The position numbers were made by a program, and so were the translations under genes. The notes under the pieces were generated by a model, which worked only from the letters and a program-made list of their open reading frames with translations, searched no databases and had not been told where the DNA came from. A stretch of 64,000 nucleotides of DNA from Octopus bimaculoides (taxonomy: Eukaryota): the NCBI RefSeq assembly GCF_001194135.2, contig NC_068986.1:5544042-5608041 (forward strand). The letters run 5' to 3'. Below are positions 1,980 to 22,900 of the stretch, one piece after another. Numbering within the stretch: the stretch's first letter is position 1; each line of letters opens with the position of its first letter.

Positions 1980-4900
1980 CTGAAATTTAAATTAAAAAAA
2001 TATTAGCTACAAACACACACAATCTCAATCCCATTTCTGAAGTACAAGTTGGATTTTATACTTGGATTTTAATACTACCAGCAGTGCATAAAAGTTACCA
2101 CCTCGTCTGTAAGACAATTATTTCAAAATCCCAAAATAACCTTCAAGCTTTCTTATCTTACAAATGCAGCTGGGTTTTCTGGTCCATTACCAAGAGACTA
2201 TTAATGTTGTAGTATTACCCAACTATCTGTCAGTCTTAAAACAAAATAGTTCTCCAAGTACTATTTTGTTTTAGTACTCATCTCCAATAACATCACTTCA
2301 TTTTTGCCTCCATTGCACACACATACACAAAGAAAAAAACCTCACACCAGTATGTGAAAATTCCCTTCACTGAACCCAGTTAAAGGAGGGTTCCTTATAT
2401 TAACATCAAACAGTACACCGTAATTTATTTTTCTCAATAGGGGACTAACCCAATCTATATATAACCATGATAATCTCTCATTCCATATAGGTATTCTATT
2501 TGACACGGCTAATTATTGACCAATTGCCATCACCCCTAACTCATCTGAAGAGATGGTTATAGTTGTAAAGCACCACCTCAGTTCATTACATTGATTATTT
2601 TACTTTCTCACAGGACCATCAGTACACTTCCCATAGAGCCAGATCTAAAAGAGACTTGTTCTCCTGCATCATACATTAGTTGTCTCTTGTTGTCAACATT
2701 GGGCAGACTGGTCTGTTGCAGCATTCACAGACTGAATACTCAAGTCAGTCTGATGTGTTCAAGGTTTGATTGAGTATGCGTCATAAGGTCTTCCACACTT
2801 TGCTTCCTATACATTAATAACCCACTTGCTGCCATTAGTAACTGCACACATACATACACACACTGTGATCAGGTGACACAACACTTCACTTCCTGATTTT
2901 GTATATACAAATATTATCACACATAACCTGCTACAAGACCTGACATTTGTAAATGACCTAACCACATTTCCTAGATGTATCAATTTATATACTGTTTCAG
3001 ATACGAGTTTCAGACCCATTTCTTTGCATAGTTACTGCAGTGATGGAAAGGATACACGGGAGGGTTTTGACTGCAATATTGTTTTTAAAGGAGAATAAAT
3101 TAGGTTTTGTTATGGAAATATCTTTATAAGGACATTAGGAATATAAATTGAACTCCACCACCATCACTACTACATTTATAAAAGAAAGTAGTTCAAAATG
3201 TAGGCAAATAGTTTTGACATCAACTGCAAAGTTAGTTACTTGAAACCTCCTCTTCAATGTTACAGCAAGAAGCCTAATATACATGATACACTAATGCTAT
3301 GGGATACAACAGCAAGTAATTGAGCATCACATTAAATGTATAATGGTATTAAATTTTATCTGCCTACATCTTGAGTAGAAATAGTGTCAAAGTTTTCAGT
3401 TTTCCAGTGCCAATAAATAATTACCAGTAACTCACTATATATTAACTTCTCTGAAAATATTAGCTTTATTCCTTGACATAAGAAAATCAATATTGTACCA
3501 TATAAAAAAACAATCATTCTGAACTAACCTGAATTAAATTTGCAGGCAGATGTGAAGTCCTGTAGCCATCATAAAAGGCCAATGCTGAGCTGAAAGCAGT
3601 TGTTGGAATTCCAGATGCGACAGCTGTACTGACTACGTGACGCCAAGATTCCTGTAAATCATGCAAGAAAAATATTAAGAAAATTAACATTCGTATAATC
3701 AATAATTTCATTTACCACAGACTTAAAAGTTATAGTAATTGTGACGTTCGTGCCATTAACAAAAACATCAAGAATGTGTTTATTAGTAATGGAGGCAACA
3801 TTAATACTGAGAGGTAATATTTAAACGTTGATGTTTTACTACAATAATATAATATAAACAAGAGTGCATTTGCACCAAAAGCCAATATGAAAGTTTCTTT
3901 CATGGTAACTTCCACAGAATAGTTTGTTCCAACAGAACACCCACATTTAAGCGGGGATAAATATTACCTCTCATTTTGAATGTGAAGTGAAATGATTCTA
4001 ACTAGATATCAATAAAGGGTTACAAATTAACTTCATCAAAAACTTATTGTTAAACCACGAAGTCTGCCAAGTTATTATTGTTAGAAAGGTGATAAGCTGG
4101 CAGAATCAGTAGCATGCCAGACAAAATGCTTAGTGGTATTTCACCTGTCACTATGCTCCGAGTTCAAATTCCACCAAGGTCATCTCATCCTTTCGGAATC
4201 AATAAATTAAGTATCAGCAAAGCAGTAGGGTCGATGTAATAGACTAGTCTCCTCCCCGCAATTTTCAGGCCTTGTGCCTTTAGTAGAAAGGACTATTATT
4301 ATCATTAAAATTACATCTGTTTTCCCTATGTAGTAGGGTTTTGATAAATCAATACATCTGAAAATTAATCCTGAACAGTCCAGTGTTCGAATTAATTGTT
4401 TTGTTTGTATAAGACTGGATGCCCTTATTACTGCTAGCTTAACTGTTGCCAATATCAGAGTAATTCTCTTCCAAGACTTGAAGTCTTCTCTACACTATAT
4501 CAGTTTTATAAGAGGTAATGATATAGTTCACTTCATTAAACCTGCTTCACTCTGATATCATTATAGGAGACATCTTTTCTGTAAATGTATTAAAAGTGGA
4601 AGAGAGATGAAAGTGTTCTAGTGGTGATCTAAGGAGAAAGAGAAGCTGGACTCTAAACACAACTCCTCGTCCATATATANNNNNNNNNNGTGTGTGTGTG
4701 TGTGGGCTTCTTTTAGTTTTTGTCAACCAAATGCACTGACTTTGGTCAACACAGGGTCATGCAGTGGGATTGAACTCAAAACCTAGTGGCTTGAAGTAAA
4801 ATTCTTAATATTACACCTATGCCTATGTGCTATTTAAAAAAATAATAATAATAGGAAGGCAATTATTGATATAAAGTAACAAAAAGATAAATATGTATAA

Positions 4901-7900
4901 AATATTTATAAATATTTTATATAACATTCATCAGAAATAGAAGATAGAATAAAGTTTAGTTCCTAAATATGGTTTTTGCATCATGAGATACGAACCAAAT
5001 AGCTTTACAAAGAAAAAAAAAGAGAAGAAGATGCAAGCTTTGATATCACTAGTAGCAACAGCAACGAGAAGCCGGTAAACTACCAAAGAAAGAATTTGGG
5101 GGATGCGGATTTAAAAAAAAGAAAGAGTACTTATACATATGCACACACACAAATCATTTTCTGTCGGCTTTCCATGCTGGTATGGGGGAAAGGCAAGTCA
5201 TTACGATGTGGAGTCAGCTCTTATATAGAGTTACTGTCCTCTGATGGGTCAGAGAACAATGTCTTGCTCATATGTTCCATTTCTGGCTTGGTTTCTTCAG
5301 CCGGATGTCCCTGCTATTAGCAAGCGCTTTGTAGGATTTTCGAGCGAGATCGTTGCCAGTGCCCCTGGACTGGCTCTTGTGCGGGTGGCACATAAAATAC
5401 ACCATTTTGAGCGTGGCCGTTGCCAGTACCGTCTGACTGGCTTTCGTGCGGGTGACATGTAAAAGCACCCACTACACTCTCTGAGTGGTTGGCGTTAGGA
5501 AGGGCATCCAGCTGTAGAAACTCTGCCAAATCAGATTGGAGCCTGGTGTTGCCATCCGGTTTCACCAGTTCCCAGTCCAACCCATGCTAGTATGGAAAGC
5601 GGATGTTAAACGATGATGATGATGATGATGATATACTAAGTGGATTTGTGTGTGTGTGTGTGTGTGTGTATATATAAATATATATATATGTTTTGAGAGA
5701 GAGAGAGATAGCGGTATCGACACACATAGAATAGTATGTGGAATGTAGCATTTCATACTGTGCAATTAATGGTAGCTATGAATGAAGATAAAAATGCAAT
5801 TGGGTCTCTGGCATGACCGTTTTACTGTTCTCGGGGGACAGCAGAACAATCCATGGAGTTGCACCAAAGTGATACTAGCTTACCCTGCATATCTAACCTC
5901 TTGATTACATAGACAATACTGTAATATTTTTTATTAATTCACAAATTATTTTCTTACCTGACATTTGGAAATAGCTGATTTGAAGAATTCATCTAACAGT
6001 AAACTTTTAAGTTTTGGGTTTTTATCAAAAGCCTCTTTAATATTTCCAAGAAAAACACTACAAATGAAAAGGACATATTTTATGGTTATTAAGGTTCTTT
6101 TTTAACCTCTACTTCTAACAATGTTTCAAATAAAAAAAAATTAATTTATAAATATAGATAAACTCAAGTTTGGTAAGTAGTAAAAGAAATATTAATTCAA
6201 TTATTCAAAATGATGTTTGTAGTTAATAAATTAACACAATGATATGAAAATACTAAATGTTAAACTGACCTGATTGTATTCAAGAGTTGAACTTAAATGT
6301 TACAGCTCTTCATTTGCTCAACTAATCATCTAGTTTTTAAAATTCATTTTACAAATGTTGCATGCTTCTCCATTTCTAACTCATTGAAAAATCTTTTTCA
6401 CTTCACAGCTAATTGATTATTCATGCAGTTTTAATTTTATAACAATAGTTTAAAAATAATGATTTTTATTGAAAATATAGTTCACTATATAAATATAATT
6501 CAACTGTAGTTTTATTTTCCGGTTAACTTCTGGTGATTAATATTTTAAGTTTTGATATTGTTTTACTTGATTTTTTTTCCCCACCATGGTAGCATATGTA
6601 AATGAAAGCTTTTGAAATGTTGCTGACGTAAACTACTGTAAATTACAATAGTTTATTTTTCTATTAGATAGATGTAGACATAGTTGGCTGTGCCCATGAC
6701 TCTCATGAGCCCACTTAAATATTTAAGAGAAATTACATATTAAATATATTAATAGAACTTTTAGTTGATAGTGATAGGAAGGGAATCCAAGAGGGCTGAC
6801 ATTCTGGAAGGAAAGATCAGGGTTATGGAAAGGGATGACAATGTTGATGAAATGTGGGTTGGGTGAAGATAGCACATCTGTGAAACAGAAGTTAGAGCAT
6901 GCATGTGACTTCATGCCAATTAGTCAAGGGACTTTTTATGGAGATGCAGTCAAGATGTCTGGATGTGTAATAGCTATATGAAGTCAGAAGGGTACATTCT
7001 GTCAGCCAGTGAAACTGATGCAAATAAATTGAAATACAAGTGAAGCAGTGTACTTTGTAAAGAAATCATGTAACAGATTTAGAATGGTTTGAAACTTTAC
7101 AGGGCATTTTTGATTTATCTATTACCATATTTAACATTTTACCATCATTATTTTCAGCATCACTTAACACTCTCCAATTAGTGTTTACTTTCCAGTTGTA
7201 AAATATTTGCTGCTGAACAAGTAACTACACTCAGTACATGAATTGCAACCCCACAATGTATATTTCAACCAGATGTTCAGTATACTTTATCTAACTTGTC
7301 TATCAGCTGACACTCAGCAGATTCAGAATAGAAAATGCTTTCAAATAGATGGATTGCAATTCCATGGGAATAATAACAGATTGCACAACAGGACTTCATT
7401 TTATGTCCAAGAATTCAATAAATCGCCCATGGAACATAAATATATTTGACTGGGGTTAAATGAAATGTAGACATATGAGTTTGAAGTAGTACAAAATGAA
7501 ATCAAGATAATTCATTTTGTCAGCAAGGAAATTATATTACAAGTAGAATGCTTTCCTGTAGCACATTTAGCATTTAGATAGTAGTAGAAATAAGATGGTT
7601 GAATGAATTGGGTACTGAATAAAGAAAGGGAGTTTGTAACTTGATTAATATTATAAAGAATCCAACAAGTAAAATTACAATCCTGTAGTTGTTGACTATA
7701 TTTTTTTCTCTTTAGCTTGGGGGCAATTAGCCAAAAAACATATTTACAGCTAGACTAAATATGCCCACATTAATATTTGTGTAGGACTTTATCTAACTTT
7801 TATTTTCAAATCCAGTTCCTAAAGATCAGTATATATCATTTTGTATATGTATTTGGAGCTTATGATTATTTTGCAAAACAATCATTCTATTATTTAAAAA

Positions 7901-10417
7901 AGAAAAAAAAATTATTGAATATCTGTAACTAATAAATAGTAAGCAGATAGATATAACCCAGAGATAGAAAAGGTGGGTATTTATTTACCTACGAATAATA
8001 CAGCCACCTCTCCACATAAGTGCAATCGATCCATAGTTTAGATTCCAACCAAGAGACTTGGCAGCTTCTCGCATTAGCATGAATCCTTGAGCATATGATA
8101 CAATTTTAGATGCATATAATGCCTGTAAACAAGAGAAAATTTGAAGTATAAAATAAATGTGCATCTCTCAAAGGTTATACACAACAATATTTAAATAATA
8201 AACAAAGCACTTTTAAAAAATAAAACAAAACTTTCAAAAACTGTACGGTAGTATTTGTTTTTCCTAATCATTTATTTGATTTATGACAACAATTTAGATC
8301 AGATATGAATATTGAATGTCATATTCCCTTTTACAGAAATATTTTAAACTAATTGTTATCAGTTTTTAAATTACATTTTTGATTCCTCTCTCCAACTCTC
8401 ACTTTTATTTTGGGATCATTTTTCTAAACCACAATCAATATTTATTCAGTTTCTTTGAAGTAAGGACAGTATTAACCAAGAGTTGTAGAATAGATATGCA
8501 AAAAACAATTCAAATGTTGAACTATCACTTCATACAAATATTGATTTATGTTTATTCACCAATGAACAATAAATGTGCACAATCAATCTTATTAAAATCA
8601 TATACATACTGAGAGGCAGGTCAAAGCTCAAAAATAGTCATTATTTGAAACAACCATCATAAATTTTTAGTGGTGAGAAAGTTAAGAACTTAATATCCAT
8701 CAGAAGAAACATCTGACAGTACCTGTTCTAGCACTTTGCACTTTTGGTAGGAAGCCTATGAGAGCACTGGTTCCAAGCTGTATTGGCCCTAAGGTGGTGT
8801 GTGTGTGTGTGTGTGTGTGTAAGGATGAGGGAGATCTCTTTTGGGCAATGTTGATTGTGTGGAAAGGGTAAATTTGCATGCATGGGTAACTTCCAGTCTT
8901 CCACAATCAAACACTGCCCAGACTTGTGCATGCAAATGCAGATACAATGCCAACATTGACTAAAAGAAGCATTATAACAAGAGAAAGTTTTAATTTAGAA
9001 TCTTAACTATTTGTATGTAAGGAAAAAAATTACTGTTCATCTGAACATTTCATAATGAATGATGCATACTTCAATTTACCATCAGTTAATATAAAGGGGT
9101 GCTGAAAAGTTTCTGGCTTTGGGTAAAAGAAAATGCAAGAGGATTCATTAATGATGATTTTATTAAACATATTCTCCTTTCAGATTCACACACTTATTGC
9201 AGCGGTCCTTCAGTTTTTCTAAGCCCTGTAAAAGAACTAGGAAGGTTGGGCCTCCAAACAAACTTCTTGTGCTACTTTTAAAGCCAAGAACTTTTCAGTA
9301 CCCCCTCATAAGTGAGGGTAGGATGAGCAGAAATAAGCCAATTCTTAAGATCTACCATACAGNNNNNNNNNNNNNNNNNNNNNNNNNNNNNNNNNNNNNN
9401 NNNNNNNNNNNNNNNNNNNNNNNNNNNNNNNNNNNNNNNNNNNNNNNNNNNNNNNNNNNNNNNNNNNNNNNNNNNNNNNNNNNNNNNNNNNNNNNNNNNN
9501 NNNNNNNNNNNNNNNNNNNNNNNNNNNNNNNNNNNNNNNNNNNNNNNNNNNNNNNNNNNNNNNNNNNNNNNNNNNNNNNNNNNNNNNNNNNNNNNNNNNN
9601 NNNNNNNNNNNNNNNNNNNNNNNNNNNNNNNNNNNNNNNNNNNNNNNNNNNNNNNNNNNNNNNNNNNNNNNNNNNNNNNNNNNNNNNNNNNNNNNNNNNN
9701 NNNNNNNNNNNNNNNNNNNNNNNNNNNNNNNNNNNNNNNNNNNNNNNNNNNNNNNNNNNNNNNNNNNNNNNNNNNNNNNNNNNNNNNNNNNNNNNNNNNN
9801 NNNNNNNNNNNNNNNNNNNNNNNNNNNNNNNNNNNNNNNNNNNNNNNNNNNNNNNNNNNNNNNNNNNNNNNNNNNNNNNNNNNNNNNNNNNNNNNNNNNN
9901 NNNNNNNNNNNNNNNNNNNNNNNNNNNNNNNNNNNNNNNNNNNNNNNNNNNNNNNNNNNNNNNNNNNNNNNNNNNNNNNNNNNNNNNNNNNNNNNNNNNN
10001 NNNNNNNNNNNNNNNNNNNNNNNNNNNNNNNNNNNNNNNNNNNNNNNNNNNNNNNNNNNNNNNNNNNNNNNNNNNNNNNNNNNNNNNNNNNNNNNNNNNN
10101 NNNNNNNNNNNNNNNNNNNNNNNNNNNNNNNNNNNNNNNNNNNNNNNNNNNNNNNNNNNNNNNNNNNNNNNNNNNNNNNNNNNNNNNNNNNNNNNNNNNN
10201 NNNNNNNNNNNNNNNNNNNNNNNNNNNNNNNNNNNNNNNNNNNNNNNNNNNNNNNNNNNNNNNNNNNNNNNNNNNNNGAAAACAAGGTGAACATCAAAAT
10301 CAAATAATCACAGAATTTTATTGACAAGATTTTTCATTGTACAAAAAAATCATCAGACAAAAGACATTTGACAAAGTGATGTGGGGCGAAAAGATATAGC
10401 ACCATATATATATAGCA

Positions 10418-10458
<41 letters not shown>

Positions 10459-13400
10459 TATTTATTGTGAATATCTTTGCAGCTGCGTTTGACTCCCAGC
10501 ACCGTTTGGCAACTGGTGTTGATTTGTTTACTTCCTCATAATCTAGCAGTTTGGCAAAAGTGACTAATAGAATAAGTGCCAGGTTTTAAAAAAACCTATG
10601 GAAGTCAATTCTTTCAGCTAAAACTTCAAGGCAGTGCCCAGTGTTGCCTTGGTCTGACGATTGAAACAAGTAAAAGATAAAAGACAGCCCATGCTATAAT
10701 GTAGATGATGACAGGGAGAGTATCCAGTCATATAAAGTGCAACAAGAACGTATGACAGATGCAGCAAAGGTGGCTGGTTTTCTATGTTGCAGTTTATGTT
10801 ACATTTGTTATAGATTAGAAATCAGATTTACAATACAATTGTATATGTATTATGCTTACCAATCAAAGAAACTGGAGTTCCATATTGCAGAGCAGCTATT
10901 GCAGTCCATTTTCCAGTGCCTTTCTACAAAATAATAAAACAAAAAAAGAAACCTGACGTACGTGACAAAAATAGATGCAAATTTATAAATTAGATTGGAG
11001 CCTGGTGTTGCCATCTGGTTTCACCAGTCCTCAGTCAAATCGTCCAACCCATGCTAGCATGGAAAGCGGACGTTAAACGACGACGTGATACAAAGAACAA
11101 TAACAGAAGAGACGACAGAATTGATGTTTGTGGATGGTAATTATATAGAGTAGATATTTGGAGTATGGTGATATTGAATAGATATTTGATATACAATGAT
11201 ATCAAGCAGATATTTAATGAACAATGATATTAAATAAGTATTTCAAGTACAGTAGTATTGAGTAGATGATCAAGTTACTGTGCTTTACTGCAATATTAAA
11301 TAAATCAACTCAACCAGAGCCATGTAAATGATCATTAAAAAAAAAAAAAAATTAAATGGTAATCTTTTACCTGACCAGCAGCATCACTGATGTTTCCTAG
11401 TAAAAATTCACCATTTTCCTTGTACTGTAAAATGTCTCGAGTGATCTCAATCAAATAGGAATTCAGTTCCTCTTTATTCCAATCATCAAAAACCTTTAAT
11501 GATAATTTGTATTTTTGTTTTAATAAAATTCGACAAATTACAAGTTTCACAAAAAATAAAGAAATCAAAAAAATTCTAGCATTCAAAACTGACTTTATTT
11601 TAGTCAGGAAAGGTAACTCCTTCGATACTTTACAGGGCTCCAAGATTAATAAAAGAGGGGAAGATATTCTCAAACCAGAAATCTGATCCAAAATGTTTGT
11701 AACAGAGCAGACTCTACTAAAGGTATCCAAAGTGCTTCATAGTTGTGTAAAACTGAGTAACAGATTAAATGACAGGATTTGAACACAGAATACAAAGAGC
11801 TGGAGCAAGGAACCAGATCTGATGTTCTAACAGATCTATGAATCCACTACTTCAGTTTTTTTTTTTTTATCATTATTATTACTATTATTATTATTATTAT
11901 TATTATAGTCCTCTGAAAGGATTATAGACCAAGTTGACTTCAGTGGAATTTGAGCTTGGAGCACAGAAAACTGAACCAAATGTTGCAAGACATTCTATCT
12001 GATGCTCTAACAACTGTCAAATTATAGTTATGTGTTTGTATTAATACATTTTACTTTCAATGGCTTGGATCAACTAACTATAAAGCACCATAACTGTGTT
12101 CCTTATTCTAACAATGATCAAAGAAACTATAACGAAACAACAAGAATTTTCTTGTCATCTTGATATCATAAGAATTAAGAATGGATAATTACTGTTTACA
12201 TTAAAGAAATTCAAACAAACCTGTGCCATTTCTGTTGGAGACAATTCTAGTACATCCTTCATCAAATGGTATGCTTCACAAATTAGTTGCATATCCCCAT
12301 ATTCTATACCATTGTGTACCATCTTTACAAAATGGCCTGCACCTTCTTCTCCAACCTTTAAATAAAAAAAATTGATTCATCTAAAAACAAATGTAAGAAT
12401 TATACAGTCACATTTGTTTTTAAAGACCAGCATACCATATTTTAATGTTAGTTTTATGACCTTCATGATTCTTTTAGAATTCAAACAACAAATAGGAAAT
12501 TAGATATCAAATGAATAGATTAGTGATTTAGCATTTTTCTGCAGTGACACAAACTGACTGAATTTGCACATTTTTATATGGGACGAAGTGGTGAGAAAGG
12601 ATTTTCAGATGTCGGGCCTTGCAGTGGGGATGACATGTCAAGCTAAGCAAAATTGTGGTTGTCCTTACACACAGCCATGTCCCCTGCATCTCTCTTCAGC
12701 TGAGTATTCCTAATCTTACAGGCTCTTGAGTGCTGGTGCTGTGTAAAAGCACCCACTATGCTCTGTAAAGTGATTGGTGTTAGGAAGGGCATGCAGCCAT
12801 AGAAAACATGCCAAAAGACATGGAGCCTGGACAGCTCTTCAGCTGGCCAACTCCAGCAAAACCGTCCAACCCATGCCAGCATGGAAAACAGACATTAAAT
12901 GATGATGATTTTTAACTATCCTCAGTTCATTTATTATAAATCCCTCTTGCAAACAATGATGGATGCTTTTAAACATACAACCATTTCTTTAGTTTGGCTG
13001 AACTTGTCTCTCATATTCACATTGCTTATCTTATAGAATTCAGTATCCAAACATTTTCATATTCATTGGATATTTTTCTAAACTCTTATATCAAGGAAGT
13101 TTAATTCCAAAATAAATGAAAGTTATTTTGTTTGCTGCACAATGGATATTATACGTTCACTGACTCTGCATTTGGCTTTATGATAGCTAAACACCAGAAC
13201 TTATATAATCACAGAATGTATAAGGTTCACTTTCCAGCTGGTATGGGTTGGATAGGTCACCGTGTTCCAAGTCAAATTTTATTGAGATACTTTTTCCAAA
13301 ATGAGTTGGAAGATATATCTCACTTGTATATTTCACTTTTGGCTTTGTTTTTATGGATGGAGGCCCTTACATCAACACTTTATAGTGTGTACTAGTCACA

Positions 13401-16400
13401 TTTCATCATGGTATCATCATTGTCATCATCATTTAGCATTCGCTTTCCATGCTGACATGGGCTAGAAGATACAGTTCTATATTTAAGAGATGAGGAATTA
13501 TGTACATTATTTACACTATTTACATTCGACGGATATTTGTCATCTTGTTTGTTGTTAATACAACGTTTCGGCTGATATACCCTCCAGCCTTCATCAGGTG
13601 TCTTGGGGAAATTTCGAACCTGGGTTCTCATTCCTAAAGTAATTTTTGATGATGGTGTTGTTGTTATTATTATTATTATTGCTATGATTACTGTTAGTGT
13701 TCAGGTCACTGCTTGGAATCGAACTTGGAATCTTGGGGTTAGTAGCCCGGTCTCTTAATCCACGGGCATATGGCATAGTGGTTAAGAGAGCAGGCTACTA
13801 ACCCTAAGATTCCGAGTTTGATTCCAAGCAGTGACCTGAACACTAACAGTAATAATAATAATAATAACATTGAAAAATACCTTAGGAATGAGAACCCAGG
13901 TTCGAAATTTCCCCAAGACACCTGAATGAAGGCTGGAGGGTATATCAGCCGAAACGTTGTGTTAACAGCAAACAAGATGAGGACAAATATCCATCAAATG
14001 TAAATAATGGGCTAGATGGTTTGACATTAGCCAGCAAGTTACAAGACAATGTCAAGCTCTAATGTCTGTTTTGGCACAGTTTCTACAACTGGAAACCCGT
14101 TTATAACACCAGTCTGAATTAATAAAATCATTTAAAAATAATGAAAAAGAATAAAAGCTTACCCAGTTACAGCAAGGTTCATTGCCAACTTTGGCAGATA
14201 TAGACTGAAAAATATCCTTCACATGTGGCCTATAAAGAACACAAGACAAATCATAGAAAGTCAATATATTTTGAAAATTACACACTAGATTTAAAGAAAA
14301 ACATTTCATAGCAAATATTTAAGGAAGTTCATTATTTACATTTGACGGATATTTGTCCTCATCTTGTTTGTTGTTAACACAACGTTTCAGTTGATATACC
14401 CTCCAGCCTTCAACAGGTATCTTGGGGAAATTTCGAACCTGGGTTCTAATTCCTAAGGTATTTTTTCCATGTTATTATTATTATTATTATTATTCAGGTC
14501 ACTGCTTGGAATTGAACTTGGAATCTTGGGATTAGTAGCCCACACTCTTAACCACTATGCCATATGCCCATAGGGAATTATGGAGTGAATTTTAGGGCTT
14601 ATAAATCTAATATTTTTGTATCCTTCCTTAATACCAGTTCCCATATGCTGCTCATATCTGCACTTGGTCTGCTAAGGAGGTTGTTGTGTCCTAGAATATA
14701 TGCTGCTTCGTTTAGTTTTCATATTTCCCAGTGGTGTTCTCTGTCTTATTTTAACTTCATCCACAGCGGGAGGTGGTCTCCATTTTTCTATACATGATCA
14801 GCTATACCCGATTTATCAATATCTCATGTCACAGCTTTGTGATGTTCATCTACCCTTATTTTGAGGGGTGGCATATTTTGCCTTTGTATAACCTACCACA
14901 GCTACATGGGATGGAGTACATGCAGTCTTTGGTCATATTCTCTTCTATTGGTGTTGTATTACTCTTGAATACTGTCCTGATGTCATATGGGCCACATAGT
15001 AGACCGAATGCAGATATGAGCAGCATATGGGAACCGGTATTAAGGAAGGAGACAAAAATATTAGATTTATAAGCCCTAAAATTCACTCCATAATTGCCCA
15101 CGGGCATATGGCATAGTGGTTAAGAGAGGGGGCTACTAACCCCAAGATTCCAAGTTCAATTCCAAGCAGTGACCTGAACAATAATAATAATAATAATAAC
15201 AACATTGGAAAATACCTTAGGAATGACAACACAGGTTCAAAATTTCCCCAAGACACCTAATGAGGCTGGAGGGTATATCAGCCGAAACGTGTTAACAACA
15301 AACAAGATGAGGACAAATATCCATCAAATGTAAATAATGTATATAATTCCTCATCTCTTAAATATTAAGGAAGGAAGTTATTATATATGTAAAGTGATCG
15401 TTTTGAAATGATACTGAAATAAGGCTACACGAAAACTGGATAATAAACTCACCAAGCTGCAGGAGATCCACCAGGCATCATAGAGGGACCATGACGTGCA
15501 CCTTCTTCACCGCCACTAACACCAGTTCCTATGTACAAGAGACCTTGAGCTTCCAAACTTTTGCAACGACGCTAAGAAAAAGAAAAAGATACATGTATAT
15601 ATGTATGTGAAGGCACACAGCCTCGTGGTTAGGGTGTTGTGCTCATTATTGTTAGAGCATGGGTTAAATTTCAGGATCAGGTGGTGTATTGTGTTCTTGA
15701 GCAAGGCACTTCATTTTGTATTGCTCTGTGATCATGTAAAAATATGATGTGTGATACACTATGCACCTGTTCAGGCAACATCGATTAGATGGAGGGGGTG
15801 AGCTAATATACAGGACAAACATTTCATCACTATAAACAAATTATTTGTACAGGTTGTTCAGCAAGAAACTGTGGAACTGTCTTTCAAAAGACTACCACAT
15901 CTTGTACGTGCATACATACATGCACATCTACATACACAAAGGTTGTACCGAAATTAATACAAAAGTGATCATAACATTTTTTATTAACTGACAATAAGCT
16001 ATTCAAATTGTACATGTTGGCCAAGTAACTCTTCCTTTATTTAAAGATATAAAGAGTTACATTACAAGTGAGCATTTGTACCATTATTGAATACAATTAT
16101 TTAATCTTCTTTGAAAATATTCAGCTGTACATTGTTGTATCCATTTCTTCAGAGCCACTTTCATTTTGTGTTATGAAATCAGGCAAAAAGCAGAGGGTAC
16201 TAGATCTAAGTTGCATGGTGGATGGGTGATCACTGATCAGCCCAATTCACCAACTGCCTTATTTGTTGCCAAAGATATATGTGATCATGTATCGTCATGG
16301 TGAACATAGATCACTTTCAGATTCTTAGTCAGCCTCTTCCTCTTAATGGATAGTGTTAATATGCAGTTTGGTGTTTACAGTACAGCCAAGTTTCAGAAAA

Positions 16401-17940
16401 TCAAGGAGAATAATGTCTTTGTCATTCCAGAAAAACAGTCAGCATGACTTTCAGTGTCAATCACTGGCTTTTAAACTCCTCGAGCCTTGGAGAATAGGTG
16501 AGATGTTTGCCAATACATGGACTGAAAGTTTGTTTCAGGATCATAAAGATACACCCAAGTTTCATCCTCAGATCAGAAGGAAAAAAAAACAAAAGAAAAA
16601 AACATTTCTATATAAGCTTCAAATGCTTCCAGCAGATCAGAATAGACTTCTGTCCTTCTCTCCTTCAAACTGAATATCAACTGCCAAGGTACCCACTTTA
16701 TACACATTGTCAAATACCCAAACTTTTCCACCATCTTCTGTCATGCATTTGTGACCACATTCCAGCTGTGCAGCAAGCTCTAGGATTGTGACTTGTTTGT
16801 TCATGCAAATCAATTCATCTACTCACTGAAGATTCATGCCAATGATGTTTATTGATAGTCTCCCTTCAATGTTGGTTTTTTTTCCTTCTTTAAAATACAT
16901 CTCCATTCACCTTTGCACATTGCTCTTGTCAATGGTGTTACTTCCATAAAGAACATGTGACTTGGTCAGCCTGCACACATCTTTCAAGTACTCAATAAAG
17001 GTATGTTGCTTCAGCTTGGAATTTGATATATGCTTGCAATGAAGAACACAATGAAGAATTACCATAGAGGAAGTGTTACTCTATTAACACATTTAGATTG
17101 AATGACCTATATAAGTTATTAAAAACGTTATGCCCACTTCTGTATTACTATAGGTATAACCCATGTGCATGCTTGTATATATGCATGTATGTGTGTGTGC
17201 GCTATGCCCACTTTTGCATTACTATAGGTACAACCCATGTGCATGTGTGTGTGCACATGCACATGTATGTGTGTGCATGTATGTATGTAAATATATGCAC
17301 AAGTGTATGTGCGTGCATGTAAGGTAGGAAGAAATGAGGAGAGTTTTCCAAAAGTTAATAATTTTTTCATAATTAGATTTGTAAATATTATAAAACAGTT
17401 TGACTTAAAACTAAATCTAACTTACAGTTGTGTCCTGATACTCCGAGTTTCCACCATCTATAATGATATCACCTTTCTCAAGCAGAGGCACCTATGATAA
17501 CATTAAAAAAAAAAAAACATTTGTCATATATTCTTCTTGCAATGTTTCCAGACACACATTGAATACAACAATATTTTAGAAACTGGGAGTCAATGTAGAT
17601 CTACTGGTTAAAACATATTTTCTCTTGTATTTAAATTTAAAATATATTTCAGACAATGATAATTGTAATACTAACTGATCTAACATTAATATTCTTGGTG
17701 CAGGCATGACTATGTCATTAAGAAGTTCCACTTCCCAACCAAATGGTTTCAGTCCCACTGCATGGCACCTTGGAAGTATACTATAATAGCTGTGGGTCAA
17801 TCAAACTTTTGTGAGAGGATTTGGTAGATGGAAACTGGAAAAAGCACATTATATATANNNNNNNNNNNNNNNNNNNNNNNNNNNNNNNNNNNNNNNNNNN
17901 NNNNNNNNNNNNNNNNNNNNNNNNNNNNNNNNNNNNNNNN

Positions 17941-17981
<41 letters not shown>

Positions 17982-19945
17982 GTGTGTATAAGAGCAAATG
18001 AGTTTGTGTGTTTCTTCTTGTTTTGACATTGTATGTTAATTGTAAGCAAATGTCACTGTCATAGAAGTGGTGTTGTTTGTTTATGATCTGAGAAAACATG
18101 TCCAGCTGCAATGAGTATCGATCCTTTTTAGAAGTCCAGGAGAAATATTTACTTGATTTGGAAACAGGTGAGAGTTGGTGACAGGAAGAGAATCAGGCTG
18201 TAGAAAATTTGCTTCAACAAACTGAATCTGATCCATGTAAACATAAAAAAAAAAAATCATCATTTAATATTCACTTTTCCGTGGATGGAATTTATTGAGG
18301 CGGATTTTCTATGGCTGGATGCCCTTCCTTTCACCATCCTTCATTTGTTTCCAAGCAAAGTAACATTCCCCCAAGATCAGACATGTTTTTGATGGAAGAC
18401 TAGAAACAAACAGTATTGCTTAAATGACAACGACACTCATTTACACTTCTCATGTGATGTCAAGACAAGAGTACACACACAAACACAAGACAGGCTTCTT
18501 CCAGTTTTCATCTACCAAATTCACTCACATGGCTTTGGTGAGCCCAGGGCTATTATAGAAGACTCTTGCCTGAGGTGCCAAGCAGTGGAACTAAACCCAA
18601 GACCATAGGGTTGGAAAGCAAACTTCTTATTTACACAGCCATACCTGCACCTGTGGATATGAAAATGATGATGATGAAGGTTCTAGCAATTTTGATATAT
18701 TAGTGCAGCCATCTGGCTCGCCAGTCCTCAGTCAAACTGTCCAACCTATGCCAGCATGGAAAGTGGACATTAAACGATAATGATGATGATGATATATTCT
18801 TTCATAACAACCATAAAGATCCTATCATGAAAATTCTTCTTAAACTGATATTTCTATTTTTATTCTGCAGTAATAGTTTCTTTGAATATATATTCATCTA
18901 CTACAAGTAATTAAGAAATTTCATCAAGAGGGTACGTGTTTGTATGAAACATCTTCTCCCTATTATACAATATCTGATTGCATTTAACACACAATCAAAA
19001 CTGAATTTAATAATTTGCTAAATAAAGACATTTTTAAAGCAATTTTCAAATTCTTAATTATTCGTTACATTATTTAAAATGAACTTAAAGATTGCAGTTA
19101 ATATACAATGAAAAAACATTATGAACCAATAAAGGAACAAAATTACTGAATCAGTAGAGCAAAGATTAGCTCTATGATAACAGGACCTTGTAGTAAGAAC
19201 TTTTTTCTAACAAATTGTCAACACACAATTATTATAAATGTTTAACCAGTAAAGATAAAATTTAATTGAAATTAATAAAAATTTAATTAAGAGTAACAAA
19301 GTTATGATACACTGATTGAAAACTTACTAATTTATCAATAAAATCATCAACAGCTTGGCCTGCTTTCACCAACATCATAACTCGGCGAGGTTTCTTTAAT
19401 TTGGACACCATATCTTCAAGTGAAGTTGCACCAATGACTTTAGTACCTTTTGCTTCATTTTCCAAAAAATTAGTAACCTTTGATACAGTTCTGTTAAAAG
19501 CACACACCTAGTATAATAAAAGAAAAGCATAAAATATTTGGTTAATAAAAAAACTCAAATCTATAGCTATATTTCCCTTACTGAGGCGCTTCCATACCAG
19601 CATGGACAATAGACATTAAGTGATGACAATTAATATCAACTATTCTTCTCATTACTTCCAAGAATTTCAATAAACATTTACAAACAGTTTCTAGTTCATT
19701 GTTGGAAATATAAGAATTTTTACTATCATGATTTTAGCCCTTTCCCATCTGCTATACTTGCAAAGACTATACAGTTCTATATTTAAGAGATGAGGAATTA
19801 TGTACATTATTTACATTTGATGGATATTTGTCCTCATCTTGTTTGTTGTTAACACAACGTTTCGGCTGATATACTCTCCAGCCTTCATCAGGTGTCTTGG
19901 GGAAATTTCGATCCCGGGTTCTTATTCCTAAGGTATTTTTCGATA

Positions 19946-19987
<42 letters not shown>

Positions 19988-22900
19988 TCACTGCCCAGAA
20001 TGGAACTCGGAATCTTAACCACTATGCCATATAATATAATATAATACAATATAAATTATAATAATAATAACATTGAAAAATACCCTAGAAATGAGAACCC
20101 AGGTTCAAAATTTTCCCAAGATACCTGATGAAGGCTGGAGGGTATATCAGCCGAAACGTGTTAACAACAAACAAGATGAGGACAAATATCCATCAAATGT
20201 AAATAATGTAGCAAAGACTATTTTCATTTTATTTATTTTTTAGATTTGATACTCTTATTGCTAAATGATTCTACTTAGGCCTGTAAGAACCACTCCTCAG
20301 AACATCCATTAGAGAATTCATTCCTGAAAATCAAAGTAATTCCAATTGAGTTCCTTTTCCTTTATATATGATGTTGTATTAAATTTCTGCTACTCATAGG
20401 CTATCTCAATGAAAAAGCCAGCTACCTGATTATCTTCAATTAATAAACTCTTTAGTTTTTAAACTGGCCATATCCAATCCAAATATTCTACTTGTTTTAT
20501 CTTCAAACTGATCATATCTGGCCTCTCACACCTAACCTACAATGTACTTCACTTACCACTGCATACTGTTTTATTCACTAGTGTCTTGTAAAAAATAGCC
20601 AGAAGGAAGGCAATATGAAACCATCTTTATAGCTTCCAGGAAAATCCATAAGTAGAGTACTTGGAATGGAAGTCACAAGGTTGTCATTTGTTGATCCAAT
20701 GGCACAAGGAAGGTTGTGTGCATGTGTGTGTACAAGTGCACGATTCACGCACACATGCATTGTTGACATTGCAAGAATTTAGAAACATCAAGAACACAAA
20801 ATAATTTCTTTTTTTGAAATGGTAAATCTTGAAGCAGAGAAAGCTATAAACAAGAGCATGCTAATACTGGATTAAAAAACTCTTTTGATAAAAAGAGTCA
20901 AAGGCTGCCAGTGAGATGCAAACCCATGTCTCCTGTAAACGTGTCAGGTATTTTTATTCCCATCAAAAAACCCTTAGCCCTTCAGCATTCACATTACTGT
21001 GTCAAATGTAATGCTTATTTATTCTCATTGTTTTCAACTAATCATTTATCATCCTGTAATGTTGAGATTTCAATGATGTGATTGCATATTTTCAAAATGA
21101 CTTTGTAGGGTAAGTGTGAGAGGTGGGATCTGGTTAGTTTGAACATAAACCAGGTAGAATATTTGGGCTGGATATGACCAAATTAAAACATCTCTGTTCT
21201 TGACACTACTCCTACTGCTCTCATCCCTCATCATTGTTTAACATCCATCTTCTATGTATGCATGGGTAAGATAGTTGACAGGAGACAGCCCAATAGAAAA
21301 CTACCCTAGGCTATTGTGTCTGCTTTGGCAGGGTTTTTACAGCTGGATGCCCTTCCTAACACCAACCACCCTGCAGATGCTTTATTAAACTATTGCCAGT
21401 ACCGCTGGACTGGCTCCTGTGCAGGTGGCACGTAAAATACACCATTTCGAGCATGGCCGTTGCCAGTACCTCCTGACTGGCCTTCATGCCGGTGGCACGT
21501 AAAAGCACCCACTACACTCTCAGAGTGGTTGGCGTTAGGAAAGGCATCCAGCTGTAGAAACTCTGCCAAATCAGATTGGAGCCTGGTGTAGCCATCCTCA
21601 GTCAAATCGTCCAACCCATGCTAGCATGGAAAGCGGACGTTAAACGATGATGATGACTTCTTCAACAGAACAGAAATCCTGAAACCAACTCCCTACCTAC
21701 CAACATGCAAACTTAAGACGTCTTAACACCACCCACTTACATAAACACCAACCCATCCTCAGCTAAAAAAGAAAAAAAAAATTGTATAAGTGTTTTTAAA
21801 CAATTGTCTTAAGATTTTCAGGGTAATGAAACATTCTTTGATAAAATTCATGCAATTTATTCAAAAAACTGGATATTCAGTAGATCTAGTGAAAATATAC
21901 TCACCACATAGCCATTATCATTCATGTTAAGAATAAGGTTTTGACCCATCACGGCTAGGCCAATCAAAGCAATGTCTGCTCTGTAAAATGAATTAAATAT
22001 ATATTAAAATTATAAGATTAAAATCATATTTCAGATTTCTTTTTTTTTTTTTCATTTGACTAGCTAGGCTTATGAAAAAAAAAATATTTATATTTGACAT
22101 AATCATTTATTATATACAAATCATTGAAAGACTAAAACCCAGTTATTCCACCTGATAAAAAGGAAAACAGTAGCCAAATCTCTCTCACATCATGCCTGCC
22201 ATCTTAAAAGGAAAGGGCACATTGACCAATCATCATCATTTAACATCCATTTTCTCTGCAGGAGTTAGATGGCTTGACAGGAACTGGCAAGGCTGGAGAG
22301 CTGCTTCAGGTTCCAGTTGTCTGTTTGGACTTGGCTTCTATGGCTGGATGCCCTTCCTAATGCCAACCACTTTATAGAGTGTACTGGGTGCCTTCTACGT
22401 GTCACCGGCACTGGTGCCTTCCATATGTCACTGGCACAAGTGCCTTCCACGTGTCACTGGCACAAGTGCATTCCACGTGTCGCCAGCACCTGCCATGTGT
22501 TACCGGCACGGGTTTCCATTTACCTGTCACCGGCACGGGTGCCATTTACCTGTCACCAGCACGGGTGCCATTTACCTGTCACCAGCACGGGTGCCATTTA
22601 CCTGTCACCAGCATGAGTACCTTTCACATGTCAACAGCACGAGTTCCTTTCACATGTCAACAGCACGAGTTCCTTTATTATTAAATTGACTAAAGTAATA
22701 CTAGATACAATTTGTTTGAAAAATATAAAAAATTATCATCATGGTTGAATTGCCTTTGAGCCATAGGTCTGTTTACCAAGAAATAATTCTTTTTTGGAAT
22801 GGTGAATATTGAAGCAAATAAAGCTATAAACAATAGCATGTCGATATTGGGTTAAAAAAAATCTTTTGATAAAAGGCTGCCCCTGGGATGCAAACCTACA

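What the first reader, a model, noticed from the sequence alone, without database searches (positions are those of the whole stretch)
13467..20210. Three independent fold-back, hammerhead-carrying Penelope-derived insertions in one housekeeping gene
Seen: 13467-14006, 14330-15370 and 19771-20210 are built from the same ~240-340 bp arm in inverted pairs. Each has its own 9-11 bp TSD, so these are separate insertions. Every arm carries GACAC-CUGAUGA-A-GGCUG-loop-CAGCC-GAA-ACGU-U-GUGUU or a decayed version. Ends are asymmetric: one arm stops at ..TAAATAATG, the other runs ~25-35 nt further. Established: PLEs carry minimal type I hammerheads with palindromic helix III that cleave as dimers, and form direct or inverted pseudo-LTRs; small non-coding hammerhead retroelements (retrozymes) exist in animals. 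Inference: this is a non-autonomous, palindromic, ribozyme-bearing family mobilised by a PLE. I do not know of it being described in cephalopods, but could not search.
Basis: partly seen in the sequence, partly recalled or inferred. Interest (0 to 1): 0.88.

Follow-up and report, generated by a model that had tools for sequence, protein, structure and literature searches.

The report
Truncated Penelope retrotransposon fold-backs in octopus PGD
Three introns of an octopus 6-phosphogluconate dehydrogenase gene each hold a dead, 5'-truncated, head-to-head copy pair of the 3' end of an ordinary Penelope-like retrotransposon, hammerhead motif included; this is the textbook insertion signature of these elements, not a new kind of mobile element.

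Summary
Three fold-back insertions lie at 13467-14009, 14330-15365 and 19770-20210. Their six arms are 90-96% alike over the shared body. Each insertion has its own 9-11 bp target-site duplication, and one end runs 26-38 nt further than the other. Every arm carries a minimal type I hammerhead motif or a broken version of it.

The centre of the second insertion (14599-14996, minus strand) is a decayed GIY-YIG endonuclease C-terminus, stop codon included. It runs straight into the arm. So the arm is the 3' end of an autonomous, canonical EN+ Penelope-like element (PLE), not a dedicated non-autonomous family.

The same ORF-plus-arm unit occurs in Octopus vulgaris and O. sinensis, again as fold-backs with a tail at one end. 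The 5' break points of 13 copies are scattered.

Fold-back, one-sided 30-40 bp tail, variable duplication and pseudo-LTR hammerhead are all published hallmarks of PLE insertion.

Across three PLE families the hammerhead is the best-conserved part of the UTR and shows compensatory changes. In the window it decays at the same rate as its flanks, and only one of six copies is intact.

The assembly gap is intronic and irrelevant. This is an ordinary finding of low interest.

The parts
13467..14009 (.). Insertion i1: head-to-head fold-back of two 5'-truncated PLE 3' ends. The minus arm is about 13467-13763 and the plus arm about 13764-14009. It lies in the PGD intron downstream of the exon at about 14160-14232, at the edge of another SINE-like repeat (13412-13461).
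13457..13466 (.). i1 target-site duplication, left copy ATGGGCTAGA. The right copy is at 14007-14016. The first 3 nt are ambiguous with the element end.
13467..13504 (-). i1 tail: a 38-nt distal 3' extension, present on the minus arm only.
   Evidence: tail concept from PMC8557442 and PMC11167929
13557..13602 (-). Hammerhead motif of i1L. The core is intact; helix I has one mismatch (GUAUU).
13917..13963 (+). Hammerhead motif of i1R. A 1-nt insertion in the core (CUGAAUGA) breaks it.
14330..15365 (.). Insertion i2: a minus-strand copy (14330-14996, 667 nt, no tail) joined head-to-head to a plus-strand copy (14997-15365, with tail). It lies in the PGD intron between the exons at about 15437-15575 and about 14160-14232.
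14599..14996 (-). Decayed C-terminal coding remnant of the PLE ORF, i.e. the GIY-YIG endonuclease. Readable motifs are [41 protein letters not shown] and SSIWELVL, ending at stop codon 14599-14601. It carries one frameshift and four in-frame stops.
14997..15072 (+). The last 25 or so codons and the stop of the same ORF, in the shorter plus-strand copy (..[17 protein letters not shown]).
14376..14421 (-). Hammerhead motif of i2L. The core is broken (CUGUUGA) and helix II is damaged.
15252..15293 (+). Hammerhead motif of i2R. The core is broken (CUAAUG-) and a 3-nt deletion removes the cleavage site.
15340..15365 (+). i2 tail: a 26-nt distal 3' extension on the plus arm only. The duplication copies are at 14320-14329 and 15366-15379.
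19770..20210 (.). Insertion i3: fold-back with a minus arm at about 19770-20016 (with tail) and a plus arm at about 20048-20210. It lies in the PGD intron upstream of the exon at 19330-19497. The duplication GCAAAGACTAT is at 19760-19770 and 20211-20221.
19770..19804 (-). i3 tail: a 35-nt distal 3' extension on the minus arm only.
19851..19896 (-). Hammerhead motif of i3L, the only copy with the complete consensus: GACAC CUGAUGA A GGCUG-loop-CAGCC GAA ACGU U GUGUU.
20120..20162 (+). Hammerhead motif of i3R. The core is intact, but the 3-nt deletion puts G at position 17, so there is no permitted cleavage site.
17858..17940 (.). Assembly gap inside a (TA)n/(CA)n microsatellite. It is intronic and is not part of any insertion or exon.

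Best explanation
These are three independent, dead-on-arrival insertions of one family of canonical, endonuclease-bearing Penelope-like retrotransposon (PLE) of octopuses. They sit in three introns of the 6-phosphogluconate dehydrogenase gene.

Layout of the arm (shown). The arm is simply the 3' end of the autonomous element. In order it holds the last codons of the RT-EN ORF, a 3' UTR with an (AAT)n run, the minimal hammerhead of the pseudo-LTR region, and then the 3' end.

How the fold-back arises (inferred from published biochemistry).
- The GIY-YIG endonuclease makes staggered cuts about 7-11 bp apart, which gives the duplication.
- Both cut strands prime reverse transcription on the 3' region of PLE RNA.
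- One strand starts at the distal start site and so includes the 26-38 nt tail. The other starts at the proximal site, ..TAAATAATG.
- Both cDNAs stop early, at arbitrary points.
- They are joined head-to-head, which makes a fold-back with one long end and one short end.

Role of the hammerhead. It serves the active master element, presumably by processing its transcripts as a dimer. In these fold-backs the two motifs lie on opposite strands, so no transcript carries two sense copies. Any transcript folds into a near-perfect long hairpin. The motifs are therefore inert passengers and have decayed neutrally.
For: (1) Coding remnant.
- The minus strand at 14599-14996 translates to a GIY-YIG domain with the PLE-specific pair of cysteines between GIY and YIG ([14 protein letters not shown]). 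RVDEHH, ADHV, NEAAYIL and a stop codon follow, and the arm continues directly from there.
- The remnant hits 11 proteins at E values from 6e-47 to 4e-11. These include O. vulgaris and O. sinensis products, one of which extends into the RT C-terminal/HTH_animal region.
- The defining CCHH feature is described in PMC8557442.

(2) Same unit elsewhere. Loci L001 (O. sinensis) and L002 (O. vulgaris) carry the same ORF-end-plus-arm unit at 78-85% identity. They too form head-to-head fold-backs with duplications.

(3) Scattered 5' ends. The break points of 13 copies spread over positions 1-630 of 667.

(4) Paired ends. Six of six fold-backs pair one proximal 3' end with one distal end carrying the tail. 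This matches the published '30-40 bp tail often only at one end', the 'inverted 5'-truncated copy' (PMC8557442), the two adjacent RT start sites, and the cleavage and extension of both strands (PMC11167929).

(5) Hammerhead form. [quoted passage not shown]

(6) Hammerhead covariation. Across 13 sequences from three PLE families, 85% of cells pair, against 13-50% when the partners are slid. Compensatory changes occur in helix II and helix I. The motif is also the best-conserved UTR block between families.

(7) Neutral decay in the window. Deviation from consensus is 16/277 in the hammerhead against 36/576 in the flanks, Fisher p=0.88. Arms of one insertion (91-93%) are no more alike than arms of different insertions (90-96%).

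(8) Hairpins. Transcripts of i3 and i1 fold into long hairpins, with z-scores of -29 and -40.
Against: - No RT domain and no full-length intact master copy was recovered. Autonomy of the source element therefore rests on the EN remnant and on partial octopus ORFs.
- i1 and i3 themselves hold no coding sequence. Three of the six window arms break within about 25 nt of the A-box-like motif, which a SINE-like start would also explain.
- i2R and i3R share a 3-nt deletion that their partner arms lack. The simplest one-template-per-event picture does not explain this.
- The two-strand priming mechanism is taken from in vitro work on a lizard PLE. It has not been shown for this family.
- The Rfam hammerhead models do not score the motif.
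Confidence: 0.85

Rival explanations
1. A dedicated short non-autonomous element, SINE-like or retrozyme-like, is built from a PLE 3' end with a hammerhead. It is mobilised in trans by a PLE and is palindromic by design.
For: - i1 and i3 are short and have no coding sequence.
- Arm starts in i1R, i1L and i3L cluster at unit positions 428-470, near an A-box-like motif.
- Non-autonomous derivatives of PLEs are a published idea (Chlamys non-autonomous elements in PMC8557442).
Against: - i2, L001 and L002 show the arm contiguous with the PLE ORF end.
- The 5' ends are scattered over positions 1-630.
- No tandem direct copies were found.
- The two hammerheads of a pair are on opposite strands, so a single transcript cannot form the dimer or release a circle.
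- Neither Rfam nor ARAGORN recognises a tRNA head.
- The palindromic layout is fully explained by ordinary PLE insertion.
Confidence: 0.1
2. A MITE or foldback-type DNA transposon with long terminal inverted repeats.
For: - Each element has long inverted arms flanked by short duplications.
- A plant miRNA hairpin model gives a sub-threshold hit.
Against: - The termini are not inverted copies of each other. One end carries a 26-38 nt tail that the other lacks.
- The inner junctions differ in every copy.
- The duplication length varies from 7 to 11 bp.
- One copy contains a retroelement ORF remnant in register with the arm.
- The arms hold a strand-specific hammerhead motif that is conserved across PLE families.
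Confidence: 0.02
3. An assembly artefact, or a rearrangement after insertion, created the inverted duplicates.
For: - PLE inverted structures are known to disturb shotgun assemblies (PMC8557442).
- The window has seven gaps.
Against: - The arms of each pair differ by 7-9%, including indels. They are therefore old real copies, not collapsed or duplicated reads.
- The same architecture recurs in two chromosome-level octopus assemblies.
- No gap lies inside an insertion.
Confidence: 0.03

Closest known systems
Canonical EN+ Penelope-like elements (Penelope/Poseidon type) and their typical genomic insertion structure (Evgen'ev & Arkhipova 2005; PMC8557442; PMC11167929)
   Same: - A C-terminal GIY-YIG endonuclease with two cysteines between GIY and YIG.
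- Heavy 5' truncation.
- An adjacent inverted 5'-truncated copy that gives inverted repeats.
- A 30-40 bp tail at one end only.
- A target-site duplication of variable length.
- A hammerhead in the terminal repeat region.
   Different: - No direct or tandem pseudo-LTR and no RT domain is present in the window copies, because all are too truncated.
- The clade assignment is only inferred. It rests on the absence of the CX2-5CxxC linker upstream of GIY in the related octopus proteins.
Minimal type I hammerheads of metazoan PLEs (Cervera & De la Pena 2014, PMC4209133), e.g. Schistosoma Cercyon
   Same: - The CUGAUGA / GAA core.
- An unpaired nucleotide 5' of stem II.
- A G10.1-C11.1 pair.
- A 5-bp helix I.
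- A 5-6 bp helix II with a roughly 10-nt loop.
- No helix III hairpin; instead a palindromic ACGU that can pair only between two copies.
- That paper also reports paired motifs on opposite strands 100-700 bp apart.
   Different: - This is a sequence family of its own.
- Cleavage has not been tested.
- The Rfam hammerhead covariance models do not detect it.
Animal non-LTR retrozymes (tandem hammerhead repeats giving circular RNAs)
   Same: A PLE-related hammerhead in short non-coding DNA. PLE-dependent mobilisation has been proposed for retrozymes.
   Different: - Retrozymes are head-to-tail direct repeats, so one transcript carries two or more sense ribozymes.
- Here the copies are head-to-head on opposite strands, one copy carries ORF remnant, and none is tandem.
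- The preprint reports retrozymes as excluded from introns, whereas these insertions are intronic.
Helenus / 'TRIMp3' LTR elements with tRNA-like sequences in their LTRs (PMC10886601)
   Same: This is only a possible analogy for the A/B-box-like module seen in the PLE 3' UTR.
   Different: - Those are LTR elements with recognisable tRNA-derived sequence.
- Here no tRNA model recognises the module.

Membership tests
Canonical EN+ Penelope-like element | GIY-YIG endonuclease with the PLE-specific CCHH motif (two Cys between GIY and YIG) and the R, H, E, N catalytic residues | tested here: met
   The translation of 14599-14996 on the minus strand reads [39 protein letters not shown]. Homologues at E down to 6e-47 keep the motif. 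The definition is in PMC8557442.
Canonical EN+ Penelope-like element | PLE/TERT-related reverse transcriptase upstream of the EN | tested here: inconclusive
   It is absent from the window because all copies are 5'-truncated. The related O. sinensis product P0008 extends into ..LAFLDVLI.. and the HTH_animal region (PF26215) upstream of the EN. No core RT motifs were examined.
Canonical EN+ Penelope-like element | Insertion architecture: 5' truncation, adjacent inverted 5'-truncated copy, 30-40 bp tail at one end, variable duplication | tested here: met
   Found in three of three window insertions and three more in L001 and L002. Described in PMC8557442 and PMC11167929.
Canonical EN+ Penelope-like element | Pseudo-LTRs formed by partial tandem copies | tested here: not met
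   The window has no direct or tandem arm copies. This is expected for short truncated copies and does not argue against PLE origin.
Minimal type I hammerhead of PLEs | Core C3U4G5A6N7G8A9 ... G12A13A14 ... A15.1-U16.1, H17 | tested here: met
   The core is complete in i3L and i1L and is mutated in the other four arms. It is also present in relatives from three families.
Minimal type I hammerhead of PLEs | Unpaired nucleotide between 9 and 10.1, G10.1-C11.1 pair, and palindromic 15.2-16.2 | tested here: met
   The motif has A, then GGCUG...CAGCC, then the ACGU palindrome. The criteria are in PMC4209133.
Minimal type I hammerhead of PLEs | Helices I and II supported by covariation | tested here: met
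   One search used 13 sequences from 3 families. In all, 85% of cells pair, against 13-50% when slid. Three pairs show changes on both sides: U-A/C-G and G-C/A-U in helix II, and A-U/U-A in helix I. The sample is small.
Minimal type I hammerhead of PLEs | Match to the Rfam hammerhead covariance models | tested here: not met
   No hit at gathering score or at E<=10, even on stretches of 190-311 nt. The likely reason is that the motif has no helix III hairpin; I did not check whether the Rfam models require one.
Minimal type I hammerhead of PLEs | Self-cleavage, as a dimer | not testable with these tools
   This needs in vitro transcription of dimeric constructs. Thermodynamic folding recovers helices I and II.
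Animal non-LTR retrozyme | Head-to-tail tandem repeats of a non-coding hammerhead unit | tested here: not met
   Only head-to-head inverted pairs were found, and i2 holds ORF remnant.
Animal non-LTR retrozyme | Circular RNA products | not testable with these tools
   No transcriptome data were available.
tRNA-derived SINE | Recognisable tRNA-related head with pol III A and B boxes at a fixed 5' end | tested here: not met
   A-box-like and B-box-like strings exist. However, Rfam tRNA gives no hit at E<=10. ARAGORN finds nothing at its default or 90% thresholds and gives inconsistent calls at 70-80%. The 5' ends are scattered.
MITE / foldback DNA transposon | Symmetrical terminal inverted repeats reaching both ends, with a fixed duplication length | tested here: not met
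   One end has a 26-38 nt tail that the other lacks, and the duplication is 7-11 bp.

The most novel reading that the evidence does not exclude
The A-box-like and B-box-like module sits between the ORF stop and the hammerhead. It appears at the same place in PLE families only about 50% identical in protein. It could be a degenerate tRNA-derived internal pol III promoter built into the PLE 3' UTR or pseudo-LTR. In that case the element would make its own short SINE-like transcripts (module, hammerhead, 3' end), which the PLE machinery then copies. This would be a PLE counterpart of the tRNA-bearing LTRs of Helenus. It would also explain why three of the six window arms begin within about 25 nt of the module.

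A weaker alternative is that the intact sense hammerheads of i3L and i1L in the PGD pre-mRNA, or the roughly 160-340 bp intronic hairpins, affect PGD RNA processing or A-to-I editing.
Probability: 0.06. Interest if true: 0.55.

Novelty: new member of a known kind. Interest (0 to 1): 0.15.

Why it matters
It matters little beyond annotation. It shows that the striking fold-back hammerhead structures in this octopus gene are routine by-products of Penelope-like element insertion and should be masked as PLE fragments.

There are two modest points of value.
- Six of six fold-backs pair one proximal with one distal reverse-transcription start. This is genomic support, from a mollusc, for the two-start-site, both-strands-primed model derived in vitro from a lizard PLE.
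- It documents a minimal hammerhead with helix covariation in cephalopod PLE families. I found no description of this in the searchable literature.

Tried and rejected
- **Rfam at gathering thresholds, whole window:** no hits.
- **Rfam at E<=10:** run on 7.6 kb and on stretches of 190-500 nt. There was no Hammerhead or tRNA hit.
- **MIR7533 hit:** the only strong Rfam match was to this plant miRNA hairpin model, 98 bits against a gathering score of 230. I rejected it as an effect of the long inverted repeat.
- **ARAGORN:** no tRNA on the window or on five loci. Local reruns at lowered thresholds gave nothing at 90%. At 70-80% they gave inconsistent anticodons, so I did not adopt the tRNA-head idea.
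- **PDB sequence search:** the octopus PLE fragment P0008 had no hit at E<=1.
- **More copies in the window:** there are none beyond the six arms.
- **MITE/foldback DNA transposon, retrozyme, SINE and assembly artefact:** I considered and rejected each, for the reasons given under the rival explanations.
- **Gene conversion between arms:** rejected, because arms within an insertion are no more similar than arms of different insertions.
- **Orthologous PGD introns in other octopus species:** these could not be fetched with the tools available, so the insertions were not dated by presence or absence.
- **Repbase and Dfam:** these could not be queried.

Full report
**Observation**

Reading 13200-15600 and 17700-20500, together with the repeat finder, confirms three fold-back insertions: i1 at 13467-14009, i2 at 14330-15365 and i3 at 19770-20210.

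A BLAST of the arm against the whole 64-kb window finds exactly six arms and nothing else. In a six-way alignment the arms are 90-96% identical over the shared body.

Each insertion has its own target-site duplication:
- i1: ATGGGCTAGA
- i2: TAAGGAAGTT, with a 4-nt slip in the right copy
- i3: GCAAAGACTAT

One arm of each pair stops at ..GTAAATAATG(TA). The other continues for 26-38 nt (..TACATAATTCCTCATCTCTTAAATATAGAACTGTA).

**Gap and host gene**

The exons on the minus strand translate to 6-phosphogluconate dehydrogenase, with E=3e-56 to human and sheep structures. The exon that encodes ..[16 protein letters not shown] lies at about 17400-17480.

The gap at 17858-17940 sits between (TA)n and (TA)n(CA)n repeats inside an intron. 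It touches neither an exon nor an insertion. The three insertions occupy three different introns.

**What the arm is**

The 322 nt between the inverted arms of i2 are not spacer. On the minus strand, 14599-14996 translates to [85 protein letters not shown], with one frameshift and four stops. This is a GIY-YIG nuclease with two cysteines between GIY and YIG, which is the hallmark of Penelope-like element (PLE) endonucleases (PMC8557442).

The last 25 or so codons and the stop codon also appear in the plus-strand arm (14997-15072). So the arm is the end of the PLE ORF followed by its 3' UTR.

A search with the remnant returned 11 proteins at E values from 6e-47 to 4e-11. They include uncharacterised products of Octopus vulgaris and O. 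sinensis, one of which continues upstream into the RT C-terminal/HTH_animal region.

The two genomic loci behind those proteins are L001 (O. sinensis CM016859.1) and L002 (O. vulgaris OX597819.1). Both carry the same ORF-end-plus-arm unit at 78-85% identity. They again form head-to-head fold-backs with duplications of 9-11 bp.

Across 13 copies the 5' break points range from position 1 to 630 of the 667-nt unit. This looks like random 5' truncation, not a defined non-autonomous element.

**Match to the literature**

[quoted passage not shown] A purified lizard PLE protein cleaves and extends both DNA strands. It starts reverse transcription at two adjacent internal sites, and the interval between them is the tail (PMC11167929).

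In the window and in L001 and L002, six of six fold-backs pair one proximal 3' end with one distal end. The fold-back, the asymmetry and the variable duplication are therefore the ordinary footprint of PLE integration. The mechanism I propose is staggered cuts, priming on both strands from different start sites, premature termination, and head-to-head joining. It is inferred from that biochemistry and has not been shown for this family.

**Hammerhead**

The consensus is GACAC CUGAUGA A GGCUG-GAGGGUAUAU-CAGCC GAA ACGU U GUGUU. It has every trait that PMC4209133 lists for metazoan PLE minimal hammerheads: an unpaired base between positions 9 and 10.1, a G10.1-C11.1 pair, a short helix I, and no helix III hairpin but a palindrome that can pair only between two copies. 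That paper already reports pairs of motifs on opposite strands 100-700 bp apart.

The Rfam hammerhead models do not score the motif. The likely reason is that they model a monomeric helix III, which I did not check.

Six further loci come from an ENA assembly of unknown host (L003-L008, about 50% protein identity). They carry two more PLE families with the same UTR layout.

In an alignment of 13 motifs from the three families, 85% of cells pair, against 13-50% when the partners are slid. Compensatory changes occur in helix II (U-A/C-G, G-C/A-U) and in helix I (A-U/U-A). The motif is also the best-conserved block of the UTR between families. The ribozyme is therefore under selection in the active elements.

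Inside the window the motif decays like its flanks, at 16/277 against 36/576 deviations, p=0.88. Only i3L is fully intact.

The two motifs of a pair lie on opposite strands, so no transcript carries two sense copies. Transcripts of i3 and i1 fold into near-perfect hairpins, with z-scores of -29 and -40. The inserted motifs are inert passengers.

**Rivals**

The ORF continuity, the scattered 5' ends and the lack of tandem copies all count against it. I leave it 0.1, because i1 and i3 are ORF-less and three arms start near an A-box-like motif.
- A DNA transposon is excluded by the asymmetric ends and the retroelement ORF remnant.
- An assembly artefact is excluded by the 7-9% divergence between paired arms and by recurrence in two chromosome-level assemblies.

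**Novelty**

PLEs are annotated in octopus genomes (PMC13282606, PMC8967140), and hammerheads are reported in all PLEs examined (PMC4209133). My literature searches found no explicit description of a cephalopod PLE hammerhead. This is therefore a new member of a known kind, possibly already present in repeat libraries that I could not query. Interest is low.

The least ordinary loose end is an A-box-like and B-box-like module in the 3' UTR, shared by diverged families. No tRNA model recognises it.

Noticed in passing
window 13771-13825 (+), 15109-15163 (+), 14508-14562 (-), 20019-20029 (-); L003-L005 around 6650-6760: The PLE 3' UTR holds a pol III A-box-like motif (TGGCATAGTGG) and a B-box-like motif (AGTTCRATTCC) between the ORF stop and the hammerhead. 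A comparable module sits at the same place in PLE families of about 50% protein identity. Rfam and ARAGORN at default settings do not call it a tRNA. In one L004 copy (5400-6000, reverse strand) the module is inverted within the UTR.
   Followed up: partly
window 18481-18800, 13412-13461, 5575-5637, 11010-11080, 46071-46157 and others: A second, unrelated SINE-like repeat (..CCAGCATGGAAAG..GACATTAAACGATRATGATGATGA) occurs as 17 fragments across the window. Insertion i1 sits at the edge of one of them.
   Followed up: partly
window 15280-15293 and 20149-20162: i2R and i3R, which are arms of different insertions, share the same 3-nt GTT deletion at the hammerhead cleavage site. Their partner arms lack it. 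This could reflect two source subfamilies, two templates per insertion event, or recurrent slippage in GTTGTGTT. It remains unexplained.
   Followed up: no
window 13467-20210 against the rest of the window: All three PLE insertions lie within 6.7 kb and none lies in the other 57 kb. My own rough scan-statistic estimate, not a tool result, gives p of about 0.03. This could be chance, or PLE endonuclease preference for existing PLE tails or AT-rich sites.
   Followed up: no
window 19840-20173: A sub-threshold Rfam hit to the plant miRNA family MIR7533 (98 bits, gathering score 230). It is caused only by the long inverted repeat.
   Followed up: yes
window 17126-17330: A TG/CA-rich low-complexity stretch with a 51-nt direct repeat (17126-17176 and 17200-17250, 88% identical). 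It produces mir-297-like and mir-466-like sub-threshold hits.
   Followed up: no
window 13486-13515 (-); L001 5174-5218: A short tandem duplication of the proximal 3' end (GTAAATAGTGTAAATAATG) lies just before the tail in i1L, and a similar one occurs in an O. sinensis copy. It may mark slippage or re-initiation at the proximal reverse-transcription start site.
   Followed up: no
window 4680-4689, 9363-10277, 23378-23477, 25759-25927, 26586-26980, 28550-28624: Six further assembly gaps lie elsewhere in the window. None is near the three insertions.
   Followed up: no
L003-L008 (ENA ERZ21867824 contigs): Contigs of 33 kb to 1 Mb filed under an ENA assembly accession (ERZ) carry PLE, RVT_1 and other animal-type transposon genes. 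They look like animal host DNA, possibly from a cephalopod or another mollusc, rather than microbial sequence. The host was not identified.
   Followed up: no
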